This document shows positions 2,698 through 58,733 of a DNA stretch of 64,000 nt, one piece after another (position 1 is the first letter of the stretch; every line of letters starts with the position of its first letter). Below the pieces are notes generated by a model that saw nothing but the letters and a program-made list of their open reading frames with translations, ran no database searches and had not been told where the DNA came from. The DNA comes from Phallusia mammillata (taxonomy: Eukaryota). Location of the stretch: contig OZ281494.1 of the NCBI GenBank assembly GCA_965637545.1, forward strand, positions 12,400,001 through 12,464,000, read 5' to 3'. The position numbers and the translations under genes were made by a program.

Positions 2698-5378
<2,681 letters not shown>

Positions 5379-7044: not shown

Positions 7045-10000
7045 ATGTTGGCTGGTGGTAGATTGGGAATGAGAGGTTTTCTAGCCTTGTTTCTGGTAGC
7101 AAGTTTTGATTGCGCAACTGCTGCAGGTAAGTTGAAATTTGTAATTTCCATTTTAACTTGTTTCCGTTTTCTTAACGTTATTTGAAAGCTACAACTTATT
7201 CCTTTGCCGGCAAAGTAAAAACTGACAACACTATGCATTAAGGCTAATATCTCCATAAAATTAACTGTTTACCTGTGGTGGTTTTAACGTTTTTATTACA
7301 CGTATTTTTATTGTTGTTTTTTCGTTTAATCCTTTTTATTTGATCTAAACGCATGGTTTTAGGGGATTTAAATCCAAATGATAGTTATCAATTTGACACA
7401 TTAACAACTAAATGGTTTACAATTAACGTTACTAAACTCACTAAGTAATAGATTCATTGAAGCTAGGTTCCAATCAACGTTCAGTAACAAATACTGCTTA
7501 CTGTTTTGTTGCTTAAATTTGCGATAGAACGCACATATAGGTTTGATTCAACTAGTAACTTACTTTAACGTAGAGTTGTATGGAGTTCTTATATGAAAAG
7601 TATACTTGACGTTTGTTCTCCAGAGCAAGGACGGACGGTATGGGAGAAGTTTCTTCGTCAAGATCCAAGAGAAAGAGACAGCATGTACTATGGTGATTTC
7701 CCTGCTGATTTTGGGTGGGGAACAGCAACGGCCGCTTACCAGATCGAAGGGGGTTGGGACGCGGAAGGAAAAGGCGAAAGTGTTTGGGATAAATACACTC
7801 ACGACTCCCGATGCAGGTATATGTGTTTTGGGTTCGTATAAAACTGAAAAGAATATTTAGGAGGTTTAAGCAAGATGTTTTGGTTGAAGTCCTGTTCTTT
7901 ATGATTTATGAAGCTACAGACAAACTATCAAGAATTTGAAAAACTTTTCCCGCAGATACTTGAAAAACCAAACAGGTGACGTGGCATGCGACTCATACCA
8001 TCGATTTGACCAAGATCTGGAAGTGATTAAGCAAGTCGGCCTCACACACTACAGATTCTCAATGAGTTGGACACGGTTATTTCCCGACGGGAAAAACACC
8101 TCAGGGCCACTTCAAGGGGGTGTCGATTACTACAACTACGTTATAGATAGCCTTCTGGCGGCGGGAGTAACGCCCATGGTGACTCTGTTCCATTGGGACT
8201 CTCCACAAGTCTTGCAGGAAGAATTCGGTGGATTCAACAGCACTCAAATAATTCCACATTTCCTGAATTACGCTGACTTCGTTTTCAGAACATTTGGTGA
8301 CAGGGTTCATCATTTTTTCACTTTTAATGAGCCTTACAATTATTGTGGTTTGGGTCACGGAATAGGCGTCAGCGCTCCCGGTCTTCTTGAACCCGCAATC
8401 GGAACATACCTGTGTGGACATCATATGTTGCTGTCCCACGCCAATGCGTACAGAAGGTGAAATCGATAAGTTGGTATTAACACTGAAGGGTTGTTTATAT
8501 ATAAACAATGTGTGTGACTTGTTTAAAGTCGCGGTCAAGTGGGTTTGACCTTGTTTGCAGCGTCAAGAGTAGTATTCTGATGCGTATGCAAGTGTCTTTT
8601 ATGTGTTTTCGAACCAAATTCCTTTCTCATAAACCTTCGTGGTTCGTTTAAAACTTTGACATTGCAAAAAAAATTCGAACGCATATCGAACAATGTTAAG
8701 CACCGTTGTGCTAAAACATTATCGATTTACTAAACATACTTATGTAAATGTGCACAGATATCACGAAATTTATCCAGGAAGAAACAGTACTGGTGAAGGA
8801 GTGTCAATAACAATGAGCACAGAATGGCTGGAACCACGTGATCCCGAATCAGCTGCTGATTGGGACGCGACAGATCGATTTATCCAATCAGAGATCGGAT
8901 GGTTCGCTCATCCAGTCTTTGTCAATGGCGATTATCCGGAGTTGCTCAAAGGTGTGAGATTGTACAGTTTGTGATAACCTTTAAGTAAACTAGTAAGAGT
9001 CTTTGTTGGCTTTTATTGTCACAATGTTATACCATACCAAACTGTTCAACAGTCCAATGTTAAATATGTTCTCAGCTTTAGGCATGGATTACAAGCAACG
9101 TTTAAAACGTTTCCTTGTGCAACTATTTTGCAGAAATGGTTTACAACAAAACCCAAAGTCAGCCGAGTTGGGCCTGGATGGGAAGCCGTCTTCCAGAGTT
9201 CACTGAGGAGGAAAAAGCTCTACTTAGCCATTCCGCTGACTTCTTTGCACTACAGATGTACACGACAAGATATGTGGAACCGTTCTACAACTATCCGGAG
9301 CTTGACGCATTTGTCAGTTTTATCTTTGACATGGATGCAATCAAAAGCTGTGACACTAGATGGGATCAATCGCCAGGTGGGAATTATTTATAAATTGCAT
9401 GGAAAGCAAAAGTTACATGACACATGACAAATACCAAAAGTGTTCGATTCTAAAAATAGACTGAAGTAATTCCAAAGATTCGCAACGTTTTCTTTGTAGG
9501 ATCCGGTTGGCTTCGACCAGTGCCATACGGGATACGAAGGCTTCTAAACTACGTCAAAGCCGAGTTCACAGATTTGCCTATTTGGATAACCGAGAACGGA
9601 TTTGAGGAAAACTATATCTACGACGATTTCCGTCGGATTTACTATCTTAAATCACATCTTAACGAGGTCCTAAAAGGTAAGGTAAAGTTTTATAGGTGCT
9701 TCTCAGTCAAAACGATTGTAAATTTACAGTACAAATGCTTACTTTCTTTTTTAACCTTTTTTGTTACAATCGTTGTTCTTTGTTACAATTAAACTTTGTT
9801 GTGTAGAGTAAGATCAATAAGCAAACATATGCAAACCAAGCATGTAGTTACTTTTACCGCAAACTGCTTTTTAATGCGTTGTGAAATTTCTTTTTGTAGC
9901 ACTACTCAATTTAAATCGTTTACAGAAGAAACTTACAAGTCAACTTAAGGCAACCAATCCAATGATAGAACTTTTTAGGCCATAGTTCAGTTGCTTCCTG

Positions 10001-13000
10001 GCCTTTGTCGCATTGTGTGGTTGCACTTTGCTTTGAAACTACAAAAGGGGACAAAACGCGGTAGTGATTGTTTAAAGGGTGGTCAATAACTTCTCATGGG
10101 AAACAAAAGACATTTTTATGATCAGCAGTTTGCATTGCAGTTAGTTCAAAGCGCACCGACATTTGAGTCAATGTTTGCTAAAATCCATGCATCACAACGC
10201 AAATGTCTTTTTCACGACAAAAAAAATTTCAACAGCTGCGCCGTTTTTAGAACGTTAACGACAATGCTGTGCACATTTAAGGAGGGAAGGTTAAATTTTA
10301 ACAGCTTTGTGCTCTCGGAGGGTGCATTAAGTTTAAAATGCCACAACCCTTAAAAATACCACAAAAATTGCGTTAGGTCGCTATTTTCTTCGCGCTTTGT
10401 ACTTCATTTTAAACATAACAAAAACATCGATACTTCATTAAACAACCGTTTAAAAATTATCGCGATAGTCAAGCTATTGAATTGAATAAACCGCTAATTT
10501 ACAAAATTAGAAAAGAAAACGAACCTTCATAAGAACAATCCTGTCAAAGGGTACAACCATGGACAATGATTTTTAGTTATTGTTGGGCGTGTTTGAGCGA
10601 CAAACCTTTTAAACACTGCTGTTCAAAATGAATTGAAGGTATAACACTTTTGTGCCGCAAAAATATAGACCCCCTCAGTAATCTGCAACCGAAATCTAAG
10701 GTAAAAGTATCGGAATACTTGTGTAAAAGGCGCTATAAGCAATTTAGTGGCGCTGTTTTCCATGCAACCACATACAACGCACGAACCTTCCCGACCCAAA
10801 AAACAAATATCAAGGTAACTGAATCTGGTCGTTTGTGCTGATTCATGATTATCCGACTAAATATGTGTTTGTGCCGAGTAATTATTTGTGAAATAATCAA
10901 ACCAAAGCGCCATGCGGAACCAAGCACTGCAATGTTGTAAGTGTTTTACAAGCACACACTGGGAGCCATGCGTCCTTGAGACGAATTGCGTCACAAATTT
11001 CCACTAATCAAATACGTTATTTGCAACCAACACATGGCTGTTGCCCAGTCTCAACATAATTGATAGCTAAGCGTACAAACATCGCAAATCATCCGTTGGT
11101 TAAAATCAAGTGTTTGGTATTAGGCAATTTGCACAGTACAACCAAAAGCGCGTTCTGTACTCGTTTAGGTGTTTGTAAAACTAATTTTGACAAGGTCAGC
11201 GTTTATTACAAATCCATCATGCAATTTTTTCAGCAAACTTCCATTTCCATAGCTCAAACTAAACACCAATAACTTATATTAGCATCCAGCCGCTTAAAGC
11301 TGATATTTATACTACGCTGTCCGCTTAATAGTATAAATCAACAAACCACGTGACATTTTGCAGCAATCCGATTGGACGGTATAAATGTACTTGGTTACTG
11401 TCAGTGGTCTTTGATTGACAACTTCGAGTGGGGATCCGGTTACACTCCGAAGTTCGGGAACTATTACATGGATTTCGAAGATCCTGAACTCGGTCGGCAC
11501 CAGAAGAGATCGTCGGAATGGTTAGAAATGTCTTTATTTGTATACATTGAGCCTTGTTTCTTTATCTTACATGTTATAGCAGCACATTTACAAAAAAAGT
11601 TATTACCAGTTGTTTAAATATTCAAGCAAACTGGTCTCACCATTCGTGTTAAGTATTGTTATTTGAAATTTAATTTGTCGACTAGGAAATCCTTTAATGC
11701 TCCGCTTTTTCTTTGCAGGTACAAGTACATGATTGCCAATAACGGGTTTTCGCAACCTCCTCAGGAAGTTTTCTACTACGGAACTTTCCCACGTACTTTC
11801 GCATGGGGAGCATCGACATATGCATACCAGGTTCTTTATGCTACTTCATATTTGGCCCCATTAAAATAAAAAAAACCTATCCTAACCCGCTCACCAAAAA
11901 ATATGGACGGTAAATTGAGTAAGTGGAAAATGGTACATTTTCTGGACGCTGTCACTACAGTAAGGGCCCATTGGGTCCTGGTCAACCATCACTGATGCGA
12001 AACAAAACTCTAAAACTTAAACTGATCTATCCATTGTATCCAATGGACGCTTGATACAGGCAGTACTTCAAGTTTTTTTTCAAGAACTTAAACTTTAAAT
12101 TTCAAATCGCATTATTTTCTGCTTTGATGTCTCGGACACCAATTTCCTTCTTTTCTCTTCAATTTTCACAGCGACAAGCAAATAATTCAAGTTGCTTATT
12201 TAGAAACATCAATTATTAGCATTTATATTTTTGGGTATTTGATTACTTTTATCGTAGGTTGAGGGGGGCTGGAATGCAGACGAAAAAGGCAGGAGTATCT
12301 GGGATGACTTCACCTTTATTCAAAGCCCAACTGAGGATGGCTCGAACGGTCAAAACGCATGTGACAGTTACAACAGAATTGACGAAGATATAAAGATGTT
12401 GATAGAATTAAGGGTGACAACTGAGTTTGTTTAAAACTAAAGTGTTTGCAAAAGTAAAACTTAACGCATCTTAGCAATCGCCAAAGAGTGTAAATGTAAA
12501 GATTTTTAAAAACAATGCGCAAAATACACTAAGTCATGTTTTAATTTGGAAACCTTTAGTTAGAAACCTTTTGTTATTTACAGGTTTCGCACTACAGTTT
12601 TTCCATATCCTGGTCACGTGTCTTGCCTGATGGTCACGTGAGCAACCTAAATAACGCGGGAATCGATTACTACAACCGTCTGATCGACGCTTTACTTTCA
12701 AACGATATACGCCCAGTTGTAACATTATACCATTGGGACCTTCCATCGGTAATTTACTTATTCCATAGAATCTGAGAGTTCAGTAAATACTTTCCAGAGT
12801 AAAGTCACTAGAACTAGTTAACAAACAAGCTGTTTTTATTTTTCCGAATATTTCCATTTACCTAATAACATCATTGACTTTTTTGCACAATTCTGCATTC
12901 AGAGATTCTGCATTAGTGGTCCCCATTTTTTTCATGAACGGGTCAACATCAACTACAAATAAGGCCTCTGGAATTCCCAAATGTTTTGAAACCTTCTCAT

Positions 13001-16000
13001 TCATAATTAAAAGACCAGTTTATGTCTTTAAAATAAATAATATTACGTTAAAAAAGATTTATTTACAGTGTATGTTTTGTAATGTGTTTTAATGGAACCC
13101 AATTTTATTCACGATTAACCCGTTCATAGAATTTACATATAATTACAAAAAAATGCAGAAACTGCAAAGCGAATACAATGGATGGGAAAATGGTCAGATT
13201 GTAAGCGACTTTGCGGACTATGCAAGACTATGTTTCGAAACGTGAGTACCAAGAATAAACTAATTAACAGTACGGACAATGTTATGTGCTTGAAGTTAGA
13301 TTTTAACATAGAAGTCATGTTGGATTGCTGTTAAAATAATAGGTTCATAAAAAAAGTTTAGTTATTTTTTTTTGGTATGCTGCAAATCGTTGTAAGCTGG
13401 ACTGTCAAGTTTTGCAACCCGTTTTCGTTACAGATTTGGTGACCGTGTTAAGACATGGATTACTTTAAGCTCACCTCAAACAGAAGCAACTAAAGGCTAC
13501 GACACAGGAGAATTCCCTCCTGAAATCCAGGTAAGTGAACAAAAACAATAAACAACATCATAACAATGCTCTGGAGATATCACGAAATGTTTCCTAGGGC
13601 AATGGCGAAACCTCCTACACAGTGGCTCATCATATGATTCTTGCTCACGCCAAAGTCTGGCATATGTACGATGCAGAGTTCAGGTCAAAACAACGTGGAC
13701 AGGTATGTCAAGATTTGGACGTCTGAGAATTTGAACTTCTCTGGCACTGCCATTTATCAGTCATGTCACAGACCCCTTTAATAATGTAAAATTGTATTGG
13801 TTTCAACGTAGATTTCTATGTCATTGGATTCTGACTGGGGTGAACCCTTTAACGGATACAAACAACGAGATAAGGATGCAGCCAACAGATTTATGCAAGT
13901 AAGAAAGTTCTCTTTGGCAAATAAAACATGTTAACGCCAATTTAAAAAATACTCTTTGAATGGTTATGCTTTGTACGCTGCCGCAAATGGCAATACGAGA
14001 ATGAATTCTATTGTTAAAACATAGTGGTCCCTCGGTTGGTTTTTGGCGCCTCTTGTGTTCGGCGATTACCCAGGAGTTATGAAGGACCGAGTTGCTCAGA
14101 AAAGCATGGCGGAAGGAAGGTCAAACTCAAGGTTACCGCAGTTCACTCAACCACAGCAAGATTACATTCGAGGTAAACAGATGTTCCTTTTTTCAATCAG
14201 TTTCCGGCCATATTCATGAAGTAATGTTTTATGTAACAAAGCGACATATTTCAGGTACTTTGGACTTCATCGCTTTGAATCACTACACAACCTGGTATGT
14301 CAGTGAATCTGATATTTACGGAAATTTGACAGCCCCTTTTATGGGGGTGGATTGCAATGCAAACACATCCCAGTATACGGAATCCCAATTATGGGCAATG
14401 CAACAGACAAGCTCCAGGGCTTTACCACAATTTGAAACTGACAACAATGAAAAGGCTGAACCAGTTGGTAAGAAAGTTATGGCTATTATAAGAATCTAAC
14501 CTGCAACTTAACGCAACATATCCCCACTAAAATAATACCGCACACTGTTTTTTCCATATTTTTTATAACTTGTTTGTTCGATTAGTTATATAGATAGTTG
14601 GAGCGGGTCTCCGTTTGATAACATTACTAATTCATGCCAATCTAATTTATCAACCTCCATCATTTCTAATATTCAAATCACGTATCTCGTTGCAAAGATT
14701 TTCCAAGATACCTTAAAAAAATAATAATAAAACTTCTTAGTGTTGCCACCAAGCGTTAAGAATGACCAGGACACGTGGTTACATCAAGATTGGACTTGGC
14801 AAAAAACTGGAAATATTAACCAAGCTGTTGTACCGTGGGGACTCCGTCGAGTTCTCGGATGGGTCAAAGGTAGTAAAACATACTTGGGATTTTTTGTACT
14901 GCATTAGTTAATAAAAGCCTTATGGATCTAAAAGGCAAAAGACGTTTCTTAAAAAAGGCGAACCATCAAAGACAAAAAAGGTGTAATGTGCAAACCATTA
15001 TGGCCTTGTGGTCAGTTGGTATTCTCTATGAAAGTCTTTTGCGGAAATCTCATCCAACAAAGCTAACCGTTACTGAGCAGATAGGAAATATAAGTTTACA
15101 TCAGATGACCAGGGTTCAAATAAAAATCGGCTATTTTAATTTCGGGTTTAAAGGGAGGCTATGCTTGTTTAACTCTTCTCACTTTAAACAGTTAAATTTA
15201 TTGTCTTGGCCTTTGTATAGATAACTATGGTGACATTCCGGTCTATGTGACTGGCAACGGATTGTCGGAACCTGTTAGAACTTCCATCACGGCTGAATGT
15301 ACATTTGGTCGGAACCCATTAACAAGGTTACCTTTGGTTTGAATTTTTGAAGTGAAATGATTTTTTATCAACCCTGGCTGCAAAAAACATGTAATACACA
15401 AAATAGGGTCGGTATGAGCAACTGCTTTTCACTCCTGACTATCAGTTCGAATTCATCCTTGGTTTGTTTTTGTAAACCTTTAGCCTAATTAAACATGAAG
15501 CTGTAACTAGAAGCTAGCGATATTATCGTAACTCCTCCAAATTGAAGTCAATTAAATAGTCCAACAATCAATAAATGATCCTTGTCTATAGGTGGAGAGA
15601 TATCGGTTTAAATGACCGCGACAGATCAGAATACATTCATTTGTACGCGGATGAAGTTTTGAAAGCAATTGACCTCGACCACGTGGACGTTCGTGGTTAT
15701 TTCGCTTCATCTCTTATGGACGGTTTCGAATGGCTTGCAGGTGTGTGTGTGTGTCCAAATTTAGGCAATTTCGATAGGTGGCGCAAAGAGCTGAATTTTT
15801 TGGTAGAGCTACTAACACAGGAACTCACAGCACACCCGATTTGCTAAATATCGATGGAGGGCGTAAAGAGCGCAGCTATTTTTTAAAAAATAGTGAAACT
15901 GGAAGAAGGTTAGGGACTAAATTACATAAACATCTAGGTTTTTAGGTTAATTTTATTGTTATTAAACCTCAGACTAACCAATAGCCCTAACCGTTAGCAC

Positions 16001-22000: not shown

Positions 22001-25000
22001 AACCTTTTTAGCATAAAAGTTTCCTACCACAAATGACCAATGAGATTGTGGTATATTCTACAGTTATGTCAAGATTAAGATTTGAATATACACATACCAA
22101 AACAGTCTTTTTCAGTGTATTATAACACCTTTTATGAATGCAAGGTTCTGCCGATTATTTCATCCTAATACCCGGCACTGCCCAACTTGTCTCATACCAA
22201 GACAATTCAGCTGCATCACCACAAAACTACTGGACACACCAGGTAGATTTTAAATACAACAGTAGCAAAAAGTTGATATATGCATTGAAAATATTGTATA
22301 ACCACAACCAAATTGAACAGCCATTACAAATTTAAATGCGATTTTTGTCACATAAGTGAGTTTTGGAATTTTTGTATTTAGCAAGAAAAAATATTTGTGA
22401 TATAGGTGCGACAACATGACATTAGTTTGTCACTAAGAATCAAATATTTCACTGACTAAAAATACCTTGCCTTACTTATCAGGACATAGCTTTGTCACAA
22501 GACGCCACTTGGCCCCAAATTGGAGCTGATCCAACTCAGTCCCCAGTATCTTGGTCGATTCGTCGCATTCTCTATCTCGTCCACGGCCGATACGTCTTGC
22601 CATCGTCATCACCCACCGCGATGACGTCATCCATTGTGGTTCACGACCCTGGGTTCGCAACCGATGACGTCACGCAGCTGGTTGACGATTGGGATCGCAA
22701 GGAGTATTACAAGTCGTATTTGAACGAAATGTTGAAAGGTGAGTTGTGTACAAACAAGGGCTTTGCGACACAATCGTTCAAAGCTAGGTTCCGTGCCAAC
22801 ATACACCAGTAAATGTACAATCGATTTACGAAACTGCTTTAAGTCTTGCATCAACAAGTCTCTTACATGCTAACGCTTCCTTGTACTTTTAGCCCAATAT
22901 CGCGAGGCTGTACCCGTTGGAGGCTTCTATGCCCAGTTGCTGGACAGTTTTGAATGGGAACACGGTTATACGAGAAGAGCTGGTTTACATTACGTTAACT
23001 TTAACGATCCTGACAGGTGCATATCATGTTGTGATTGGGTAAAATTTATGTCTAAACAATGTCCCAAAATCTACCTGTCGAATAACAATCTCTCCAACAA
23101 CTTATCAAAATAAAACTAGCGTTTAGTTGGAAAACAAACATGTTTGCATACCCTTGCTTTCTCTCCTATTCAGACCTAGAGTTGCGAAAAGTTCAGCGAC
23201 CTTTTATCAAGGGGTTGCGAGCGAAAACGGTTTTCCAACTTCTGAAGCCGACAAGATGTTGTACGGAACCTTTCCATCCGGTTTTATGTGGGCAGTTTCG
23301 TCAGCTGCTTACTCGGTATGTTTAAGTTTTACTTGTCTAGTAACTGGTAAATCTCAATAGTCAGATCAGTCAGATATCTGCCTGAAGAGATAATTTAAAG
23401 GCACGTTTTGTCAGATCGAGGGCGGTTACTCTGCAAAAGACAACGACAGCATTTGGGATCAGTGGACACATGGCCTCAGTGGTGACAATGCGGACGTTTC
23501 AGCCAACCAGTACGAGATGTGGGCCGATGACATTAATCTTCTGAAGTATCTTGGCGTAACACATTATCGCGTGTCGATCTCATGGAGTAGGTAAGTAAAT
23601 GAAAAACCGCCGAAGTTACCACAACGTACCAATAAAATAAAACAGCTTAAGGCAAGAAAAGACAAAATAAGTTGGACCCTATGCAACCAACTAAACCTAT
23701 ACAATAAAATTTTCTTTAGATTTCTTAGCGCCACCGGCCAACGGTATTACCAGGATTTCTTTACCGAACTAAAAAACAACAACATATCAGTGATAGCTGA
23801 CCTTTATCATCACGATCTACCAGCGAACTTGTTTGCCAATGGGTGGGCTGATGGTGGAATCGTAGCAGAGTTTGAGAAATACGCGCGAAATTGTTTCGAT
23901 CTACTTGCTCCAATGGTCGATATGTGGATAACGATTGCGGCCCCTTACGAAGAGGTTGGGTTGAATATTGTAACAATATCTTATATATGTTCTATGGCAT
24001 AATTCTTGTCTTGAAGTGTTGACTTGACACCGCAGTCAGTACGAGTCATAGCTTTTCAACCACTCTTCGTTGGATACACTTATTACAAGCCATTTTTATG
24101 GAGTTGAACTTACAGATCTCGCATTGCCACGAAGTTTTTAGTTTTCCAGCCATTCAAATATATCATAGAAATGTTTTGTTGACTAGGTAATAAACGGATA
24201 CATGGGCAACACTTGGCCTCCAGGTTTAAACGACGCACAGATGGGATATGATGCTGCACATAACATGCTGTTAGCACATGCTGCTGTTTGGACACTATAT
24301 GATACAAATTACAGGTAAACTATGCTTTTATAACTCATTTTACTGAGGCATTGCAAGTTTGCTCTCTGTATTGTTCTAAGAAGCGTTTCAAAACTCTTCT
24401 AATCAGCAAAATATAGTGTAATTTATTTTTGTCTCTAACAGATCGGTGCATCAAGGTCAAGTTGGTTTCTCTCTTCTTGCTAATTGGGCGGAACCCAACA
24501 ACCCGAGCATACAAGAAGATTACGACTACAGGGAACTGTTTCTAAATGACGTCATCGGGTGGTTCGCCAACCCTCTCGTATCCGGGGATTACCCTCAATC
24601 AATGAGAGACAGACTGGGAGCTTCCCTGCCCGTCTTCAGTACGGACAATACGGGAAAGTTTGATTTTTTCGGAGTGGATCATTACACAACTTATCTGGTA
24701 GGTTTAGTGTCAGTTTGGTAGCCGAGGTAGGGTATTAATTTAAATGTCTTTTTCATGGCTTTTTTTGATCATTTGTAAAGGGGGGAATAAGTTTTTCTAA
24801 TTAATCCTACTTAACTAGTTGCGACCTTCCAAGGACGATTTTCGGTCGTTATTTTTTTGCTTACGATTTTAATGTCACCTTGGCTCAGATATGTATATAT
24901 GTTTAATTTTCATTGGGTTATTACTTTTTCTGTTGTTCACCAATCGAATTATACCTCAACTCAACCGATTTGGTCATAGGTCAACAGCGAAGGCGCCAGA

Positions 25001-28000
25001 CAAGATATTACATGGCTTCCATTAATTGACCCTGATATAAAACCAAATCCCAATGGTCTCCGAAAAGTGGTAAATTGGATTTCACAAACTTACGGACAGG
25101 ATAAAGGACTTTTTGTTTCCGCTACCGGTGTACCGGATTGGAACACTGCACCACTAGAGGGCAACACAATCATTACGGACTATAAAGGAAATTACGTTAA
25201 CGAGGCTTTGAAAGGTATTGTGAATATTAATATTGTTAAAACAGGCATTTTGGAGATATCTTGGATGGTGTTTTTTTAATAACAGCGCATTTACTGGACG
25301 GAGTCAACCTACAAGGATTTGTGGAGAGATCGTTTCTGGACGGATTTGAGTGGGACCTCGGGTATACGGCAAGGTAATGTCTTTGTTTAGTGTATATCAA
25401 TGCATTCATAAGGTTTTTATTTCAGACTACAAACTGTTTGCGTGTGACCACTGAATTTTGCAATAACCAATAAGTCTAGTGCCAATCTTGAATTATTTTA
25501 AAATATTGTTTATGATATAACAGAATAAAACTCAAGGGTCACTTTAGTATGTTCACTTCCACGACAAGTCGTTTCAAAAATATCCTCTAAATTTGCATAA
25601 AAATGCTCAAGTACCAAAATGTGAGTATGTGCTTACGCAGATACGGCCTATACCACGTAGATTTTGGTTCTTCATTTCTCAACCGGACCATCACCACATT
25701 CGGCGAGCAATACAAACAAATTGTAACCGACAACGGATTTGCCACTGACCAACTTATCAACATGCTGCCCATTACGTCATCTGAAAGCGACGTCACCGCT
25801 TTGACAGATTCCCCTTTTGTTCCAATGGAGGCGTCGGCCATTCCGTCGTCAGCAGGTGTTTCGATTTGGGAGGTGGGTACAAGTTTGGTCACAGTACGCT
25901 GACACAGTCTCCAAGATAGCATTGAGTTAACAGTAAACGTTTGAGGATAAGTCGCTTCTTAAAAGTATTAAATAATATATGTTTTCAACATGGCTTTTGT
26001 TGCAGGAATTTAACGCAGTTACAGCTTGGGAAAGAGATCAGTTCTACTACGGAACATTCCCTGAAGGTTTTACTTGGAGTGCATCTACGTCATCTTATCA
26101 GGTAAAGTTACTTCATGAACTTTTTGTCGTTAAAGATTTACCCGAGCAATATGTCTTTTAGATCGAGGGAGCTTGGGACGAAGATGGCAAGGGTGAAAGT
26201 ATATGGGACAGATTTGCACATACTCCTAACAAAATTTACAACAATGAAACTGGGGATATTGCGTGTGATAGTTACCACAAGGTAAAACAGAAGTTGCTTA
26301 CTTTAAACTAAAGGTTTAAGATTTTGGCAACTCATTCTCATTTTGCTTGCTTTTGGCATTTGTTTTAATATTTGCACTTAATGACCTTTAAAATAAACCT
26401 TGGTTTTAGACTTCTGAAGATGTGAACCTCATTAAAATGCTTGGCGTGAGCCACTACCGCTTCTCAATTGCGTGGACCAGAATTTTTCCCGATGGAACCA
26501 ACGCTAACCTGAACCAGGCTGGTGTTGACTATTACAACCAGCTAATTAACTCTCTGATTGAACATGGAGTTGAACCAGTAGTCACTCTTTACCACTGGGA
26601 CTTACCACAGGTATTTAGATTTTATGCAAAAAAATTTATAGCACAAAGTTTAAACAGTCGATAAAATGAGTGTGTGAAATTAAATCAACATGTGAGTCTT
26701 GATTCAGCTTTTGCCTAAGACATTTTTGTTCAGTTAACTTACCCACTATCTTCCATATTTTGTGAATAGGCCCTTGAAGATATCGGAGGTTTCCAAAACG
26801 AAGTCTTCGTCCAACATTTTGTCAACTATGCGGATTTTTGCTTTAATGCCTTTGGCGACAGAGTCAAGTTTTGGATCACATTCAACGAGCCTTACGTCGT
26901 AACTTGGCTGGGGTTAGTCAATCGAGAAATATGTTACTACATGGTATATAGTGAGACCAAAAATCGCTTGTAATTTTCCAATCTAAACTTTATTGCATAT
27001 AAATTCTTCGGAGATAGCGGCAGTGCCCTCAATTAGTGTGCTATGATGTGTAATCGCATGGCCCAACTAAATCGATAAAAGGGGCATTGTGGGTGAATAA
27101 TATCTTCAAACCAAATCCATTTTACATGGGTAGATATGGAATTGGCGTCTTTGCCCCTGGAATTTACCAACCTGGTACGGCCCCTTACCTGGCTGCCCAC
27201 AACCTCATCAAGGCACACGCAAAAGCCTATCGTCTTTACGAAAGCAAATACAAAGTTTTACAAGCTGGAAGAGTTGGGATGACCATGAGCAGCGAATGGG
27301 CTGAGCCTAAAGATCCAAACAATCCACTTGATGTTGCAGCCGCTGATAGGTTCATGCAGGTACGACTGTAATTACAGTGTAAGGTTCAACAGCGACAAAT
27401 GCCTTTTCTTGCAGTCTGTGCTGGGTTGGTTTGCACATCCGATTTTCAAAAACGGGGATTATCCGGAGGTTGTCAAAAAGCAGGTGGCAGACAAGAGCGC
27501 CTTGCAAGGTTTGTCACCAAAGTTTTTCTTGGCAAAGAAATTTGCCGGTTTGCTATTTAATAGGGGTGATTTAATTCTTGCTTTAAAAAACGTTTTTTTA
27601 AATCAAAGTAACACAAAATAAGCAACCGACTATAAAACTCGTCAGCTGTCGGGAAATAATATATTTTAAAGTAAATGATTTTCTTGCCATTTTACATTGT
27701 TTTTTTTTACATTAGGTTACGCAGAGTCACGATTGCCGGCATTCACTGAAGCGGAAAAGCAAGAAATAGCAGGAAGTTATGATTTCTTTGCTTTGAACGG
27801 TTACACCTCACGCTACGTCAGCCATGAGGTTAAGGATTCGACCGTTCCCAACTATGAAAATGATCGAGACACACATGAGGTGAGAAATTGGCCTTACCAA
27901 CATCCATAAGTTTGTCGCCAAAGATTGCCATCGAGTGGCCGAATACATAGCCTCTCTGTATACGTGTTTTAAAGCTTTTTGGCGTCTGTCCTTCAGTTCG

Positions 28001-31000
28001 TGCATACTCCTTGTATCGACGGGACAACATCATTAGGGTTCTCTTATGATCAGACCTCCATGTCTTCTAGGAACCGATTACGGGTGCCATTCAAGCCTTT
28101 CCCGATTGGTTGCAAATCGTTCCCTGGGGTATGCGGCGTCTCCTAAACTGGGTGGACAGGGAATATGGTCATCCCCCGGTTTACATAACTGAAAACGGAG
28201 TTGGGACAGCAGACCCTACTATTGATGATCAAGTTCGAGTCAATTTCTTTAAAGCTTACATTAACGAGGCGTTGAAAGGTTTGTTCAGAGGAAAACGTTG
28301 ATTATTATATTTGAAGTTGTTTGCTTGTGTGTTGCGAGTGAGACATTTATAGCATTTTGACTGGTTTGGTTCGAATTTGTTTCACTTTCTTCTACACAGC
28401 GTACCATCTTGACGGAGTAGATCTGCGAGGCTACACGGCTTGGTCGTTAATGGATAACTTTGAATGGTCTTCCGGTTACAGCGCGAGATTCGGACTTTTC
28501 CAAGTTGATTTTGAAGATCCAGCACGCCCAAGAACACCAAAACGATCTTCTATGTTTTACAAGTACGTAGTAAGGAAACAAACAGTTTGGTATTCTGTCT
28601 TTTGAGTGTGCTGCACATAGATATAACTGAGCCCAGGTCCAGTCAGACTCGGGCTTAACTTGGAACAAATCGGGCTTGATTCGGGCCTGAATTTACCCTT
28701 CACCACATGCGTGTTGTATAAAATGTACTTTTTCGAACTTCTATATTATATTATTTTTTCGAAAAAAAGATATATCTTGCAGCGACAAGACGAGTGTATT
28801 TAACTTTTTTCAGCGAGGTGATTCGAAACAACGGTTTTCCTCCCTTAGAACGCGACGAACGATTAGTTGGGGATTTTCCTTCAGACTTTATATGGGCAGT
28901 TGCAACTTCGTCATATCAGGTATACGCGAGTAATTTGAAGTTTCAAATCTGATACTTTTGTGTTTACCGTAACGCAATATGTCTGGGTTGACTGTAAGTA
29001 AGGTTGAGATTGGATTGTGAAAGGATGTTACCAAAATTAACAGACTATGATCTGTAGTGTCCTTTTCAGCATTTAGTATGTTATGTTTCATTACATATCT
29101 AGATCGAAGGAGCTTGGCGAAGTGACGGAAAAGCTGTTGGAATTTGGGACAAAACATCTCACACCCCAGGATTAATCTCGGTAAGCAGAAGCTCACAGTA
29201 AAGTTTCGTTGTACAATCAAAGCGATTTCACGGCGCGAGATTTAGGAGGATAAGTAATTCGCTTATGTCTTGGTATTTCCAGGATGGAACGACTGGTGAC
29301 ATCGCTTGTGATAGCTACAACCAAGTCGACGTAGATGTGGAACTTTTAAAAAATCTTGGGGTTTCCCATTACAGGTACTGAATCAAATTATCAAACTGTT
29401 TACGATCAAAATCTGGTGATTTCCTCGGCTGGGACCTTCCACTAAAGGAGGGTTTTTGCCACAAATGTTTCTAATACTCCCTTTACGATTATTTCGTTTC
29501 TTGCAGATTCTCTCTATCTTGGCCACGTCTAGTCCCAACCGGTGACGTTTCGGGTGGATTGAACCCTGCTGCTGTGGATTACTACAATCGTCTAATTACC
29601 AGTCTGCTCGCTGCCAACATAGAGCCCATGGTCACTCTTTATCACTGGGATCTACCATTGGCGTTTCAGGTGGGAAAATATTTTTGTTTAGCTTGTCCGA
29701 GAATTGTAAACTTACTAACAAATACACGTATGAACAGTCACCACAAAGTGTAAAATTTAATCCCTTTCTTAGGATACATTCGGTGGATGGCCAGATAGTC
29801 AGATCATCGATTTGTTCGTGGCATATGCTGATGCCTGTTTCAAAGAATTTGGACCGAGAGTAAAGAAGTGGATCACATTTAACGAACCTTGGGTATTCAC
29901 GGTGCTCGGATATTCTGATGGAGTTCATTCGCCAAACGTAAAAGACCCAGGTCGTTCCGAGTACCAAGCCGGACACAATGTGATTTTGGCACACGCAAGA
30001 ACTTACAGGCAAGACGTTTTTTTAATCGATTGATTACTATATCTGCAAATATAGTCTTCTATGTATACTTGAGCTGGCACTGCGTGTTTATGTGTGTATA
30101 CCAACTAGAAACAGGTGTGTTTATAAATTTTTCATCTGTTTCCTTCCATTCGCGTAGAAACAAGATAGCTGGTCAATAAAGTAAGCTTTTATTTTACGAC
30201 TGCAGCCAAAAGATTCAACCAACCTATCAGATCTTATGACTCATAGACACCATTCCATTTAACCACAATGACATTTGCGTTGTAGATTCCCGTTTTTTTT
30301 TAATAACTAGCGTTTTACTTGAATGAGAACGTGACTTCCTATGTTTTTTTTTGCTTCTATAGATTATACTATAGCACGTACGCAGCAGCCCAGGGAGGTG
30401 AGGTCGGTATTACATGCAACTCTGATTGGTCCGAAGTTAGAAACATATATCGTGAAGTCGATTATGATGCAACCGATCGCGTCATGCAATTCTTCTTGGG
30501 GTGGTGGGTTCACCCAATCTGGGTCAACGGGGATTATCCAGATGTTATGAAGGTTCGAAAATAAACTCAAAAACAATTGATGCTGACTGTAGCAAAGTGG
30601 TCCCAAATATAGTACAGCAAAATACATAAAACACCATTTTATATTATAAAGGAATATGTGGACGCAAGAAGTGCCGCCCAAGGCGAAGCCGAATCCCGGC
30701 TTCCGAAGTTCACCGAAGCAGAGAAAAACATGATTAAGGGTAGTGCAGATTTCTTCGGATTAAACCATTACACCACCAACCTTGCGTTTGACTCGTTTGA
30801 TCCAGCGTCAGTAAACGACGTGGGCTATTATCAAGATCGAGAAGCAAATACTGTACAAGATTATACGTGGCCACAAGCTGCATCCTCTTGGCTTAAAGAG
30901 GTAAGAAACATACTAAAAGAAAATGAGCAACGCTTAATCCATTTTGAAAAAAAACCTAAACAGAATTCGCACTTCAAGCGCCCGGGCACAAAAATCAACT

Positions 31001-32640
31001 TTTGAAAGCATTTAAGTTTATTTTGAAAACAGACCTTTAACGTTCGTGAATTACCTATGATTCATTGCTTCTCCATAAGAACCCGGGAAATACACGGTTG
31101 TTTAATTAAAACTTAGCTATTCGGAAGTTCAAATATAATTCCTACACAGTCTTGTATCTGTGCTTTATACAAGTACACAGTAGTGCTTGACTTGTGGGCG
31201 CATTGTTAGGTTCCCTGGGGTCTTCGTCGTCTCCTGTCTTGGATTAAGGATCAATACGGAGATCCCCCGATCCTGATCACTGAAAACGGATTGTCAGAAG
31301 AAGGATCATCAGAGGAACTCAACGATTTTTGGAGAAAGGAATATTACTATAGTTACATTAACGAAGTGCTTAAAGGTAAAGCTTTTCTCGTCAAGCAAGT
31401 ATCACTTATTACTGCAGTATTTGGTTTGTATAATTCCAATTTGTGTTGATGTTTTATAGCTATCAAAATTGATGGTGTAAACGTCATCGGTTATACTGCC
31501 TGGTCCCTGATGGACAATTTTGAGTGGGCAGAGGGCTACAGCGAGCGATTCGGGTTACATTGGGTCAACTTCAGTGACCCGGCACGACCCCGAACACCAA
31601 AGCAATCGACTCTTTGTCTGAAGGAAATTATGAGTAAATCCTATCCAGCTTCTGGACTACCTGCGTGCATGACATTCAACAATGTAACAGCAACAACCAC
31701 TCCCGCTGTTGAGCAAACCTCCGCTGATACAACAGCAGGTGGCACTGCTGATACCACGGCAGAAAGTCGAAGTAAGTACCTAATATCAGACAGAATACAC
31801 AGATAGGCATAGAAAACAGCTTCTTTCCATAATTCGAAATTATATATGAAACAACACCATAGTTACAGCATTTTTGTTTGTTTCTTTTTAAGTATGTAAT
31901 TGTTTCCAACTAAGTAACCATGCCAAAAGCGACAATGTGTTGTTTGATAATTAAGTTAGTTTCAAAGTGCAACAGCAATTGTTGAACTACAATAGATATA
32001 TCGACGTGTGTACGAACTGGGGCTGTTTTTAAAATTCTGCCAAATTTTTCGTTATTTGGGAACCGCGTTTAACAAACCAGTTATATTTTAAAGTTTACCC
32101 TTGGTCCTTTTCATTTGTACATGCTCACAATCCAATTAAAATCATACGTAACAGTTGTGTTAAACCGCAATATTTCTTCAGCGACTTCAACTCCTGTTGT
32201 CATAACGACGACCACGTCGACACAGGCACCAATCACGACCACAACAAGTAAGGGAGGTGGAGACCTAACAGGAAAACCAAAGTTCCTTGGCCTATCTCTG
32301 GATCAGCAAAGTTCCGAGACCGCACTTAATGTCCTCTTCGCATTTACCATCGTGTTTTTTGCCACAACCTTATTGGCTGGTATGTTTACGCGTTGTGTCA
32401 AACTGAAGTACTTTTGTAATGTGTAGATCTAAGTGGATACTTGGAACTATGAAAAATCTTGAACCGTAGTCGCCTTTCTTTGCTTAGATCTAGTTGCGTG
32501 TGTAACCTGAACTTGTATTTTCAGTGTTGCAAATATGGAGACTGGGCAGTAAAGGCAAATCCTCCAAACATTCTCCACTCTTCAATTCCACGAGCAAGGA
32601 AAACGGTGTAAACGAATATCACGAAGTCTCTGGTCTATAA
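7045..32640 (+). CDS. LCT: Lactase-phlorizin hydrolase-like type I membrane protein with seven tandem GH1 domains (~65 exons, ~11 kb CDS, ~3,700 aa by hand sum)
   Basis: Signal-peptide exon 7045-7126 ([27 protein letters not shown]). A continuous in-frame exon chain runs through seven repeats of the GH1 motifs (F..G.F..GF.W..AT.AYQ.EG; YRFS.SW.R; TLYHWDLP; W.TFNEP; ITENG; W.L.DNFEW..GY..RFGL). Each domain-to-domain junction is coding with no stop. The stalk, TM and TAA end at 32640. Confidence 0.93.
7576..11760 (+). other. GH1 domain 1, predicted catalytically competent
   Basis: TFNEPY at ~8326-8334 and ITENG at 9586-9600. N-terminal VWEKF...[10 protein letters not shown] extension. Boundaries approximate. 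Confidence 0.9.
11770..16520 (+). other. GH1 domain 2, pseudo-enzyme domain lacking both catalytic Glu, with two loop insertions
   Basis: NEP is replaced by SSP (WITLSSPQ, 13465-13476) and ITENG by VTGNG (15247-15261). Boundaries approximate. Confidence 0.88.
15809..16074. repeat. Intronic fold-back (MITE-like) element with a perfect 25-bp inverted repeat
   Basis: ctactaacacaggaactcacagcac (15809-15833) is the exact reverse complement of 16050-16074. A taggtggcgc/gcgccaccta inverted pair lies nearby. Confidence 0.7.
16570..19720 (+). other. GH1 domain 3, predicted catalytically competent
   Basis: WITFNEPF at 17676-17684, GLNHYTS, ITENG at 19271-19285 and [18 protein letters not shown]. Confidence 0.9.
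20045..23240 (+). other. GH1 domain 4, divergent, with Asp at both catalytic positions
   Basis: WVTIYDPY at 21046-21057 and IVVHDPGF at 22633-22653. NHYT is replaced by IPGT and HWD by HFD. Confidence 0.85.
23255..25745 (+). other. GH1 domain 5, pseudo-enzyme domain
   Basis: SAAYS replaces [12 protein letters not shown] at 23934-23945, LFVSATGV at 25115-25129, and HHD replaces HWD. Confidence 0.88.
26035..28840 (+). other. GH1 domain 6, predicted catalytically competent (position of mammalian LPH domain III)
   Basis: WITFNEPY at 26884-26892, ITENG at 28185-28199 and [18 protein letters not shown]. Preceded by SIWEEF...[10 protein letters not shown]. Confidence 0.9.
28860..31640 (+). other. 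GH1 domain 7, predicted catalytically competent (position of mammalian LPH domain IV)
   Basis: WITFNEPW at 29881-29889, GLNHYTT, ITENG at 31276-31290 and [18 protein letters not shown]. Confidence 0.9.
30009..30362 (+). other. Non-canonical GC-AG intron in LPH-like domain 7
   Basis: The exon ends ACT TAC AG|GCAAGA and the next exon starts ctatag|A TTA TAC, giving [12 protein letters not shown]. No in-phase GT donor exists before the next stop. A GT donor occupies a nearby homologous position in domains 1 and 5. Confidence 0.8.
31670..32640 (+). other. Thr/Ala-rich mucin-like stalk, transmembrane helix and ~33 aa cytoplasmic tail of the LPH-like protein
   Basis: Exons 31460-31771, 32182-32379 and 32525-32640 give [19 protein letters not shown]...[15 protein letters not shown]...[46 protein letters not shown]...YHEVSGL*. 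Confidence 0.85.
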
Positions 32641-38060: not shown

Positions 38061-38569
38061 CTGAACATCAGTTGATCAGTAGTTGCGTTTATTATGTATT
38101 ATTAGTGTTCAGCGAAAGTGCGAATAACAGTGCTCAGTCGACAACCCAATGTCTTCAGTGTATCTTTAATCATAATTTCTTGTATTTTTAATCAGTTTGT
38201 TATAAAACAGTTTGAATCGGTACAAACATGTCGTTTGATTATTTGAGGGTCCAACAAGTTGCGAAACATTTAGGTACGTTGTGTATACGGAAGGTCCTTG
38301 GTATTGTACCAAACCAATTCGCATGCAGCAACCAAACACTGGACTGCGTATGTCCTAAACCGGATAATTTCGCTGTACAGCGCAATTAACAAAGCAAACT
38401 CTAATTCCAAACTACAAACTGTTGTTTGGAATTCAAGCAAACCTCGTGACAGTTTTTTTTTAATTTACAACAAAAAACGTTGGTTATAATAACGGGCGAG
38501 GACTTTTTTCATTGACAAATACCTCGCGGAGCCTTGAGCATAAACGCCAAAGAAAGCATTGGAACTCAT

Positions 38570-52834: not shown

Positions 52835-52843
52835 GTGTTCTTT

Positions 52844-58660: not shown

Positions 58661-58733
58661 AAGTTGTGCAGAAATGAAGCAAAATTTCAGTAGCTGCGTT
58701 CAAATTTTTTCGAAAGATTAAAAAGCATTAAGC

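What the first reader, a model, noticed from the sequence alone, without database searches (positions are those of the whole stretch)
7045..32640. A seven-barrel lactase: one giant membrane-anchored polypeptide with seven GH1 domains, four predicted active
Seen: an unbroken spliced frame runs from a single signal peptide through seven complete GH1 repeats to one stalk/TM/tail. All six inter-domain junctions are coding (e.g. [15 protein letters not shown], 11719-11830; [15 protein letters not shown], 23174-23315; [15 protein letters not shown], 28814-28919). There are no internal stops or extra signal-peptide exons. The catalytic pattern is active-dead-active-(Asp/Asp)-dead-active-active. Established: mammalian LPH has four homologous domains with only III and IV active, and Klotho has two. 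Inference: domains 4-7 mirror the LPH I-IV layout, and three extra N-terminal barrels add two more active sites. That would make a ~400 kDa multi-specificity beta-glycosidase, plausibly on a gut or feeding epithelium. I am not aware of a characterised GH1 protein with this architecture, but I cannot check databases.
Basis: partly seen in the sequence, partly recalled or inferred. Interest (0 to 1): 0.9.

Follow-up and report, generated by a model that had tools for sequence, protein, structure and literature searches.

The report
Seven-domain membrane-anchored lactase-like glycosidase gene
One sea-squirt gene of 65 exons encodes a 3,660-residue membrane-anchored protein built from seven lactase-like (GH1) enzyme domains, four of which look active. 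The same gene is already predicted but unstudied in other sea squirts, and a six-domain relative is a known digestive enzyme of shipworms.

Summary
My spliced model (65 exons, 7045-32640, + strand) gives one open frame of 10,983 nt and 3,660 aa (415 kDa). It has one signal peptide, seven full GH1 domains, a Thr-rich stalk, one transmembrane helix and a short tail. Every domain boundary lies inside coding exons. Spliced RNA contigs from four runs of one study show 15 of the 16 modelled introns in 17500-23499, including D3->D4 (19755->20026) and D4->D5. A tandem gene array is therefore very unlikely.

Collinear seven-domain orthologues with the same dead/active pattern are already in RefSeq as "uncharacterized protein" for Ciona intestinalis, Clavelina lepadiformis and Styela clava. 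Bivalves have 6-8-domain GH1 proteins, and the six-domain shipworm LpMDGH1 has been purified and assayed.

In the domain trees D7 groups with LPH IV and D6 with LPH III. The linker pattern and the membrane-proximal motif also match LPH. D4/D5 correspond to LPH I/II by position only, and D4 groups with Klotho KL1.

Verdict: a real, expressed, unstudied variant of a known kind, of moderate interest.

The parts
7045..32640 (+). Whole coding span of the gene: 65 exons, CDS 10,983 nt, 3,660 aa, stop TAA at 32638-32640
   Evidence: Spliced alignments and assembled model. Collinear with the Clavelina, Ciona and Styela orthologues at 55-63% identity.
7045..7126 (+). Exon 1: start codon and signal peptide (27 aa, hydrophobic core [10 protein letters not shown]), phase-1 donor G|GTAAGT
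   Evidence: Sequence read. It joins in frame to exon 2 (7624-7816), which carries the VWEKF...ERD...YYG motif. No RNA check.
7674..11752 (+). GH1 domain 1 (aa 45-527), NEP at 8326-8334 and TENG at 9589-9600: predicted active. Contains the longest intron (9677-11363).
   Evidence: Profile hit of 789 bits over HMM 1-474. Motifs.
11719..11830 (+). Junction exon D1|D2: the C-terminal ...NNGF of D1 and the N-terminal YYGTFP of D2 lie in one exon
11762..16529 (+). GH1 domain 2 (aa 531-1069), SSP / TGNG: both catalytic Glu lost. It has two lineage-conserved insertions (exons 14255-14467 and 15221-15326).
   Evidence: The insertions appear only when ascidian orthologues guide the alignment.
16420..16596 (+). 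Junction exon D2|D3
16563..19717 (+). GH1 domain 3 (aa 1081-1558), NEP / TENG: predicted active
   Evidence: 818 bits. Five of its introns are confirmed by RNA joints.
19527..20138 (+). D3|D4 junction: exon 19527-19755 (end of D3 plus the ...PWEYFWAK linker), intron 19756-20025 (phase 2, AA|GTAAAA...ACAG|A), exon 20026-20138 (start of D4). An in-frame TAA and an AATAAA lie at the start of the intron.
   Evidence: The joint 19755->20026 (GT..AG) is seen in contigs of runs X1 and X2, with 97 nt on the D4 side and 231 nt or more on the D3 side. Sequence.
20039..23237 (+). GH1 domain 4 (aa 1576-2078), YDP / HDPG: Asp at both catalytic positions, and the Asn of NEP replaced
   Evidence: Asp/Asp is conserved in Ciona, Clavelina and Styela. 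Introns confirmed by RNA.
23174..23315 (+). Junction exon D4|D5
   Evidence: RNA joints 23013->23171 (X2, X3) and 23314->23414 (all four runs)
23247..25743 (+). GH1 domain 5 (aa 2082-2511), AAP / SATG: both catalytic Glu lost. It is the most divergent domain (32-39% identity to the others).
25641..26101 (+). D5|D6 junction: exon 25641-25872 (end of D5 plus a 52-aa Ser/Thr/Pro linker ending in VSIWE) spliced to exon 26006-26101 ([16 protein letters not shown]..., start of D6)
   Evidence: guided by the Ciona savignyi fragment P0003 and by bird LPH.. No RNA check.
26033..28841 (+). GH1 domain 6 (aa 2564-3035), NEP / TENG: predicted active. Groups with vertebrate LPH domain III.
   Evidence: 850 bits. 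Tree 98/99. LPH III scores best against the D6 profile.
28814..28919 (+). Junction exon D6|D7
28851..31647 (+). GH1 domain 7 (aa 3039-3515), NEP / TENG: predicted active. Sister to vertebrate LPH domain IV. Contains the only GC-AG intron (30009-30362).
31648..32640 (+). Thr-rich stalk, FLGLSL...ETALNVLF juxtamembrane motif, TM helix (about aa 3604-3627, in exon 32182-32379) and a 33-aa basic tail (exon 32525-32640)
   Evidence: The TM lies inside exon 32182-32379 whichever last donor is used. The last splice site (G|GTATGT ... TTTTCAG|) is inferred.

Best explanation
This is a single, expressed ascidian gene for a type I membrane glycoprotein of about 3,660 residues. A signal peptide is followed by seven tandem GH1 (beta/alpha)8 barrels, an O-glycosylation-type Thr-rich stalk, one transmembrane helix and a short cytoplasmic tail.

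D1, D3, D6 and D7 keep the acid/base Glu (NEP), the nucleophile Glu (TENG) and the other glycone-binding motifs. They should act as retaining beta-glycosidases held at the outer face of a membrane.

D2, D4 and D5 have lost the catalytic Glu pair but keep full-length barrels. They most likely serve as folding helpers, spacers or sugar-binding modules, as is proposed for the pro-region of vertebrate lactase-phlorizin hydrolase.

The C-terminal part (D6-D7-stalk-TM) is the counterpart of LPH III-IV-stalk-TM.

Shown here: the architecture, splicing across D3-D4-D5, and conservation among ascidians. Inferred: enzyme activity, membrane topology, the digestive (gut epithelium) role, and the fate of the precursor.
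For: - Pfam GH1 hits on single exons.
- One uninterrupted 65-exon frame whose independent overlapping alignments agree.
- Seven full-length profile hits of 312-850 bits.
- All six domain boundaries lie in coding exons.
- RNA contigs with GT..AG joints at 15 of the 16 modelled introns of 17500-23499, bridging D3->D4 and D4->D5.
- Only one signal peptide and one TM.
- Orthologues of 3,592-3,703 aa in Ciona intestinalis, Clavelina and Styela, each with seven PF00232 stretches (Pfam run on the Ciona and Clavelina proteins; Styela counted with my own GH1 profile). They align in register at 55-63% identity against 36-45% out of register.
- The same dead/active pattern in all four species.
- Each domain forms its own 100%-supported ascidian clade.
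- Motifs YQxEG, HWDLP, NEP, NxY, TENG and WSLxDNFEW are intact in D1, D3, D6 and D7.
- D7+LPH IV at 90/94 and D6+LPH III clade at 98/99.
- Shared juxtamembrane motif and linker pattern with LPH.
- Characterised relatives are digestive enzymes: shipworm LpMDGH1 (PMC5840672), and mollusc LPH-like GH1 genes expressed in the hepatopancreas (PMC7560691).
Against: - No contig or read spans the whole mRNA. RNA evidence covers only 6 kb of 25.6 kb, comes from one study, and the runs are labelled RNA only by guess. The spliced contigs themselves argue that they are RNA.
- The tissue of expression is unknown.
- No activity data exist for any ascidian member.
- An in-frame TAA followed by AATAAA sits at the start of the D3/D4 intron, so a short isoform cannot be excluded.
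- The protein may be cleaved after synthesis, as LPH is.
- A few exon ends (D2, D5, last intron) rest on homology alone.
Confidence: 0.8

Rival explanations
1. A tandem array of separate GH1 genes (for example a three-domain gene followed by a four-domain LPH-like gene) that merely looks continuous.
For: Domains 4-7 resemble the LPH layout. A stop codon and an AATAAA lie just after the D3 exon. Several database 'giants' from frogs, fishes and Physella are merged tandem genes, with two TM helices or two signal peptides.
Against: Four boundaries lie within single exons. RNA contigs splice D3 to D4 and D4 to D5. There is no internal signal peptide, Met-initiated hydrophobic exon or TM. The frame is kept across all 64 introns. 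The architecture is the same in three other ascidians.
Confidence: 0.03
2. One gene, but the seven-barrel chain is only a precursor. As in LPH, it is cut after synthesis (most plausibly in the long D5|D6 linker), and the dead domains act as an intramolecular chaperone that is removed. The working enzyme would then have fewer barrels.
For: In LPH the pro-region (I-II) is cleaved off and assists folding (as summarised in PMC5840672). The D5|D6 linker is the homologous place, is 52 aa long and is Ser/Thr/Pro-rich.
Against: No RX[KR]R furin-type site occurs anywhere in the model. Shipworm LpMDGH1 keeps all six domains in the mature protein. Active domains D1 and D3 lie upstream of the dead ones, so removing a 'pro-region' would discard active sites.
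Confidence: 0.25
3. Alternative use of the D3/D4 intron (retention, stop at 19757-19759, polyadenylation after the AATAAA) gives a secreted three-domain enzyme alongside the membrane form.
For: TAA overlaps the donor and AATAAA follows at once.
Against: The two runs that cover the site show the spliced form. No contig piece is listed inside the intron, and bin depths there fit the exon parts only. AATAAA is frequent in AT-rich introns.
Confidence: 0.08
4. The central dead pair D4-D5 is a Klotho-like binding module (KL1/KL2-type) with a receptor or lectin role, so the protein is not purely a digestive enzyme.
For: D4 groups with Klotho KL1 and a Lymnaea 'klotho' domain 1 (97/92; SH-aLRT 97 after removing other fast-evolving domains). 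D5 and D2 group loosely with KL2 (90/89). Asp/Asp in D4 is conserved in four ascidians.
Against: These are the longest branches of the tree, so attraction is possible. Only two Klotho sequences were sampled. There is no functional data. Four neighbouring domains look like ordinary enzymes.
Confidence: 0.15

Closest known systems
Predicted ascidian orthologues: Ciona intestinalis LOC104266271 (P0283, 3,592 aa), Clavelina lepadiformis LOC143462503 (P0282, 3,646 aa), Styela clava LOC120331019 (P0284, 3,703 aa)
   Same: Seven GH1 domains in the same order. Same dead/active pattern, including Asp/Asp in D4. Signal peptide, Thr/Pro stalk, FLG...E.AL..LF motif and a single C-terminal TM. Collinear at 55-63% identity.
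   Different: They come from other species: the window's protein is only about 63% identical to the nearest. All are automatic predictions named 'uncharacterized protein'. No paper in the searched library mentions the Ciona locus.
Vertebrate lactase-phlorizin hydrolase (LPH/LCT), e.g. P0001, 1,927 aa
   Same: GH1 multi-domain type I membrane protein. D6 and D7 group with LPH III and IV. Same linker lengths at II|III and III|IV. Same juxtamembrane motif and TM anchor. Dead domains lie upstream of the two C-terminal active ones.
   Different: LPH has four domains, the first of them a truncated remnant (profile positions about 70-230 only). The ascidian protein has seven complete barrels and two further predicted active sites (D1, D3) at the N-terminus. 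LPH II keeps the acid/base Glu in tetrapods (HEP), whereas D5 has lost both catalytic residues. The synteny differs: here the neighbours are a nuclear receptor and an SLC6 transporter.
Shipworm multi-domain GH1, LpMDGH1 (Lyrodus pedicellatus, P0178, 2,752 aa; PMC5840672), and predicted 6-8-domain bivalve relatives
   Same: A long chain of GH1 barrels joined by short linkers behind one signal peptide, mixing active and dead domains (four of six predicted active). The shipworm protein is a proven single polypeptide and the major digestive beta-glucosidase.
   Different: It is secreted and has no TM, with six domains rather than seven. There is no domain-by-domain orthology with the ascidian protein: in-register and shifted alignments score alike at about 40%, and the mollusc domains form their own clade. 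The expansion was probably independent.
Alpha/beta-Klotho (e.g. PDB 5W21, 5VAN; Latimeria P0046)
   Same: Type I membrane proteins made of catalytically dead GH1 domains. D4 groups with KL1 in trees. Klotho chains are the second-best solved matches.
   Different: Klotho has two domains only and acts as an FGF co-receptor. KL1 keeps the nucleophile Glu and KL2 keeps the acid/base Glu, whereas D4 has Asp/Asp and D5 has neither.
Two-domain beta-glucosidase, PDB 8IN1 (994 aa)
   Same: Best solved-structure match to both D4-D5 and D6-D7 (E-values 3e-188 and 9e-281). Two GH1 barrels in one chain.
   Different: Two domains only.

Membership tests
Glycoside hydrolase family 1 (Pfam PF00232) | Significant match to the GH1 profile over the full (beta/alpha)8 domain | tested here: met
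   Single exons hit PF00232 at 1e-12 to 1e-58. Seven full-length hits to a GH1 profile, 312-850 bits. The orthologues tested against Pfam (Ciona, Clavelina) have seven PF00232 stretches each.
Glycoside hydrolase family 1 (Pfam PF00232) | Catalytic pair: acid/base Glu in NEP and nucleophile Glu in (I/V)TENG | tested here: met
   Met in D1, D3, D6 and D7. Not met in D2 (SSP/TGNG), D4 (YDP/HDPG) or D5 (AAP/SATG). The protein as a whole qualifies, but three of its domains are pseudo-enzymes.
Glycoside hydrolase family 1 (Pfam PF00232) | Measured beta-glycosidase activity | not testable with these tools
   Needs expression and assay.
Lactase-phlorizin hydrolase (LCT) orthologue | Four-domain I-IV layout with a truncated domain I | tested here: not met
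   There are seven complete domains. D4 covers profile positions 3-475, whereas LPH I covers about 70-230.
Lactase-phlorizin hydrolase (LCT) orthologue | The C-terminal active pair is orthologous to LPH III and IV | tested here: met
   D7+LPH IV at 90/94. D6 lies in a 98/99 clade with LPH III, which also holds a sea-urchin and a snail domain. LPH III scores best against the D6 profile, about 700 bits against about 600.
Lactase-phlorizin hydrolase (LCT) orthologue | Stalk, conserved juxtamembrane motif, single C-terminal TM, short tail | tested here: met
   FLGLSL...[10 protein letters not shown] here, against FLGLDL...EIALYVLFAL in bird LPH.
Lactase-phlorizin hydrolase (LCT) orthologue | Dead domains D4 and D5 are orthologous to LPH I and II | tested here: inconclusive
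   D5+LPH II is not recovered but not rejected (AU p = 0.48). LPH I and II show no preference for the D4 or D5 profiles. LPH I joins another long branch. Positional and linker evidence favours the correspondence.
Lactase-phlorizin hydrolase (LCT) orthologue | Lactase and phlorizin hydrolase activities; proteolytic removal of the pro-region | not testable with these tools
   No furin-type site was found, but that does not settle processing.
Mollusc-type secreted multi-domain GH1 (LpMDGH1-like) | Six or more GH1 domains in one chain | tested here: met
   Seven domains.
Mollusc-type secreted multi-domain GH1 (LpMDGH1-like) | Soluble, with no membrane anchor | tested here: not met
   A TM helix is present here and in all ascidian orthologues. 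None is present in Lyrodus, Ruditapes, Crassostrea or Haliotis.
Mollusc-type secreted multi-domain GH1 (LpMDGH1-like) | Domain-by-domain orthology | tested here: not met
   In-register and shifted alignments score alike. Mollusc domains cluster together at 97/98, apart from the ascidian domains.
Klotho family | Two dead GH1 domains (KL1, KL2) plus a TM; FGF co-receptor | tested here: inconclusive
   D4 groups with KL1 and D5/D2 group loosely with KL2. The architecture differs, and receptor function cannot be tested here.

The most novel reading that the evidence does not exclude
The ascidian seven-barrel protein may preserve an old chordate arrangement: a Klotho-type dead pair (D4 like KL1, D5 like KL2, with Asp at the acid/base position as in LPH I) sits directly upstream of the LPH III-IV-type active pair and the membrane anchor. 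Vertebrate LPH and the Klotho family would then be pieces or partial copies of one multi-domain ancestor rather than independent duplications of a single-domain enzyme. Asp/Asp in D4 is conserved across ascidian orders. According to unchecked scan notes, it also recurs in two more paralogues about 400 kb away. It would then mark a functional, non-hydrolytic or altered-chemistry site.
Probability: 0.15. Interest if true: 0.7.

Novelty: new variant of a known kind. Interest (0 to 1): 0.45.

Why it matters
**Largest anchored GH1 chain.** Among the proteins examined here, this is the longest well-supported chain of GH1 barrels that also carries a membrane anchor. It is conserved in four ascidians, three of them from genera usually placed in different orders.

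**Bearing on lactase evolution.** Tunicates are the closest living relatives of vertebrates. The protein therefore bears on how intestinal lactase-phlorizin hydrolase, and perhaps Klotho, acquired their domain layouts. The C-terminal module III-IV-stalk-TM evidently predates the tunicate-vertebrate split.

**Pseudo-enzyme domains.** The protein gives a natural series of four live and three dead barrels in one chain, useful for studying what pseudo-enzyme domains do in such polyproteins.

**Practical limit.** It is a candidate digestive beta-glycosidase of a filter feeder. It is not a new kind of enzyme.

Tried and rejected
1. My first splice-aware aligner gave spurious micro-exons. One cause was a float32 rounding bug in the gap step. 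The other was a linear gap cost that made two introns cheaper than an insertion. I fixed both with float64 and affine gaps.
2. A GT-only donor rule mis-modelled D7. The true donor at 30009 is GC (GCAAGA), so GC donors were added.
3. Distant references (bird LPH, the window's own D6-D7) dropped two D2 insertions. Ascidian orthologues restored them.
4. An exact look-up of the Ciona savignyi fragment P0003 found no contig.
5. The D1-like protein P0015 is a chimeric metatranscriptome contig and gave no context.
6. The search of 1.84 billion representatives with a D1 exon showed nothing longer than 1,927 aa. That turned out to reflect which cluster representatives were listed. The length-windowed search with longer queries found the giants.
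7. Frog (3,323 and 3,352 aa), fish (3,583 aa) and Physella (3,917 aa) 'giants' were rejected as true parallels. They carry two TM helices or two signal peptides and repeat a four-domain pattern twice, so they are merged tandem genes.
8. A tree on the 167 columns that LPH I covers only joined LPH I to another long branch.
9. Paper searches for Ciona with lactase, for LOC104266271, and for Klotho with Ciona found nothing relevant.
10. A findings search by words gave nothing.
11. I made no structure prediction.

Full report
**What is in the sequence**

The window has no N runs and is about 38% G+C. Between 7 and 33 kb the + strand carries dozens of short open frames with unmistakable GH1 motifs. 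Ten of them were scanned against Pfam. Eight hit PF00232 (Glyco_hydro_1) at E = 1e-12 to 1e-58. The first-exon and TM-exon frames hit nothing, as expected.

**Gene model**

No spliced aligner was on hand, so I wrote one: a protein-to-genome dynamic programme with phase-aware GT/GC-AG introns and affine gaps.

It was guided by several references in turn:
- a Ciona savignyi fragment (P0003);
- bird LPH (P0001);
- a D1-like protein (P0015);
- the window's own D6-D7;
- finally the full-length Clavelina orthologue (P0282).

Overlapping runs agree on the exons. Joined, they give 65 exons from the ATG at 7045 to the stop at 32638-32640. There are 63 GT-AG introns and one GC-AG intron (30009-30362). 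The CDS is 10,983 nt with a single terminal stop, encoding 3,660 aa and 415 kDa. A first version, guided by distant references, lacked two D2 insertions and had 3,597 aa.

**Architecture**

A GH1 profile finds seven full-length domains:

| Domain | Residues |
|---|---|
| D1 | 45-527 |
| D2 | 531-1069 |
| D3 | 1081-1558 |
| D4 | 1576-2078 |
| D5 | 2082-2511 |
| D6 | 2564-3035 |
| D7 | 3039-3515 |

- The domains are 32-54% identical to one another.
- The N-terminus is a signal peptide encoded by exon 1.
- After D7 come a Thr-rich stalk, one TM helix and a basic tail. No other TM-like segment exists.
- The linkers between domains are 3, 11, 17, 3, 52 and 3 residues long.
- Four boundaries lie inside single exons: 11719-11830, 16420-16596, 23174-23315 and 28814-28919.
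- At D3|D4 and D5|D6, the exon that ends one domain runs on into the linker, including part of the VWE.F...ERD...YG.FP lead-in of the next domain. It is then spliced to the next exon.
- Several intron positions and phases recur across domains, for example position 412 phase 1 in D1, D3, D6 and D7, and position 23/24 phase 0 in D2, D5, D6 and D7. This is what duplication at the genomic level would leave.

**Catalytic residues**

| Domain | Acid/base motif | Nucleophile motif | Reading |
|---|---|---|---|
| D1, D3, D6, D7 | NEP | TENG | predicted active |
| D2 | SSP | TGNG | dead |
| D4 | YDP | HDPG | Asp at both positions |
| D5 | AAP | SATG | dead |

D1, D3, D6 and D7 also keep the YQxEG, HWDLP, NxY and WSLxDNFEW motifs. 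That the four intact domains are active is an inference from conserved residues, not a measurement.

**Transcript evidence**

Four runs of one study hold 13-28% of the sampled words of 17400-23399, which is what exons alone would give.

Their contigs were laid on 17500-23499. They lack the introns and show GT..AG joints at 15 of the 16 modelled introns: 14 in the joint table and one more in the table of pieces. Four further joints were not listed by the tool.

- The key joint is 19755->20026, which links the last D3 exon to the first D4 exon. It appears in X1 and X2, with 97 nt on the D4 side.
- The D4|D5 junction exon is joined on both sides: 23013->23171 in two runs and 23314->23414 in all four.
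- The contigs are at most about 1.1 kb long, so they prove local continuity only, not one 11-kb molecule.
- An in-frame TAA overlaps the D3/D4 donor and is followed at once by AATAAA. A short secreted isoform is conceivable, but nothing shows it.

**Relatives**

The nearest protein first found was a Ciona savignyi fragment, which pointed to a tunicate genome. Length-windowed searches then found complete orthologues:

| Species | Locus | Id | Length (aa) |
|---|---|---|---|
| Ciona intestinalis | LOC104266271 | P0283 | 3,592 |
| Clavelina lepadiformis | LOC143462503 | P0282 | 3,646 |
| Clavelina lepadiformis | second paralogue | P0176 | 3,139 |
| Styela clava | LOC120331019 | P0284 | 3,703 |

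- The three named loci are called 'uncharacterized protein' by RefSeq; the second Clavelina paralogue is an unnamed protein product.
- They align with my model end to end at 55-63% identity. Out-of-register alignments reach only 36-45%.
- Pfam counts seven GH1 stretches in the two proteins I tested.
- They share the signal peptide, stalk, juxtamembrane motif and TM.
- They share the dead/active pattern, including Asp at both catalytic positions of D4.
- The window's species is none of these.
- In a careful IQ-TREE analysis, each of the seven domains forms its own ascidian clade with 100% bootstrap. The seven-domain layout therefore predates the split of these lineages.

**Is the architecture new?**

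No paper in the searched library names the Ciona locus or links Ciona with a lactase-like enzyme. But long GH1 chains are not new:

- Bivalves and gastropods have predicted proteins of six to eight domains.
- Shipworm LpMDGH1 has 2,752 aa and six GH1 domains, four of them predicted active. It is secreted. It was cloned as one ORF, purified as a protein of about 300 kDa, and shown to be the main digestive beta-glucosidase (PMC5840672). Those authors thought six domains unique to the shipworm, and the databases now show otherwise.
- Some database 'giants' (two frogs, a wrasse, Physella) contain two TM helices or two signal peptides and repeat a four-domain pattern. I read them as merged tandem genes.
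- The mollusc chains are not orthologous to the ascidian one domain by domain.

**Relation to LPH and Klotho**

- D7 is sister to LPH IV (90/94). D6 lies in a 98/99 clade with LPH III.
- LPH III scores about 100 bits higher against the D6 profile than against any other.
- The 52-aa D5|D6 linker with its ...IPS.A.VSIWEEF...ERD motif corresponds to the 47-aa II|III linker of LPH. The 3-aa D6|D7 linker corresponds to III|IV.
- The motif before the TM helix is shared with LPH.
- The C-terminal module is therefore homologous to LPH III-IV-anchor.
- For the dead domains the evidence is positional only. LPH II stands alone in the tree, and forcing D5+LPH II costs 1.4 log-likelihood units (AU p = 0.48). 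LPH I is a 150-220-residue remnant that cannot be placed.
- Unexpectedly, D4 groups with Klotho KL1 and domain 1 of a Lymnaea 'klotho' protein (97/92). It still does so after the other fast-evolving domains are removed (SH-aLRT 97). D5 and D2 group loosely with KL2 (90/89).
- These are the longest branches in the set, and only two Klotho proteins were sampled. I treat the Klotho grouping as a lead, not a result.

**Solved structures**

The best matches are a two-domain beta-glucosidase (8IN1), then alpha- and beta-Klotho, then human cytosolic beta-glucosidase. No LPH structure is in the copy searched.

**Mechanism I commit to**

A single precursor enters the secretory pathway and is anchored by its C-terminal helix, with all seven barrels outside the cell. 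Four barrels hydrolyse beta-glycosides by the retaining double-displacement mechanism of GH1. The three dead barrels act as folding aids, spacers or binding modules. A digestive role at a gut epithelium is the most likely one, by analogy with LPH and with the mollusc enzymes. The tissue was not tested here. Whether the chain stays whole or is cut is open: no furin-type site is present.

**Verdict**

The LPH comparison is half supported. The novelty claim is overstated. This is an unstudied seven-domain, membrane-anchored variant of the known LPH-like multi-domain GH1 proteins, of moderate interest mainly for the evolution of LPH and Klotho.

Noticed in passing
window 2815-5375 (+): A nuclear-receptor gene lies upstream. 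Two ORFs carry the C4 zinc-finger DNA-binding domain (PF00105, E = 2e-8 and 4e-16), and a third has a weak ligand-binding-domain hit.
   Followed up: partly
window 33586-37900 (+) and 58415-58690 (+): An SLC6/SNF sodium:neurotransmitter symporter gene lies just downstream (PF00209 in three ORFs). A second SNF fragment lies about 23 kb further on.
   Followed up: partly
It lies beside retroelement-like ORFs at 41.4-43 kb and looks like a gene fragment left by a duplication.
   Followed up: partly
window 38565-40655 and 61458-63609: A segmental duplication on the same strand, 83-85% DNA identity over about 2 kb. Together with the second SNF fragment, this suggests a duplicated block downstream of the gene.
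   Followed up: partly
window 21300-21700 (intron of D4): RNA-contig depth is 1,400-2,800 here against about 5 on the exons, with many loose ends and a non-canonical 32-nt joint. This is a dispersed, highly represented repeat inside the intron, not part of the gene.
   Followed up: no
window 50107-51145 and 52812-53869; also 47718-47921 and 52618-52821: Near-identical repeated ORF-bearing blocks, probably tandem copies of a mobile element. A lysine-rich retroelement-like stretch follows at 54-56 kb.
   Followed up: no
window 23016, run X2: One contig continues after 23016 with a variant of the junction-exon sequence (PRTPKSSAT in place of PRVAKSSAT). It is either an allele or a close paralogue that is also expressed.
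   Followed up: no
same genome, about 406-410 kb beyond the window's end: Scan notes report two more GH1 paralogues whose first domain has Asp at both catalytic positions, like D4 here. I could not see that DNA.
   Followed up: no
database proteins P0168, P0170, P0289, P0288: Frog, fish and Physella 'lactase' predictions of 3,300-3,900 aa contain two TM helices or two signal peptides and a repeated four-domain pattern. They are likely mis-merged tandem genes in public annotation.
   Followed up: partly
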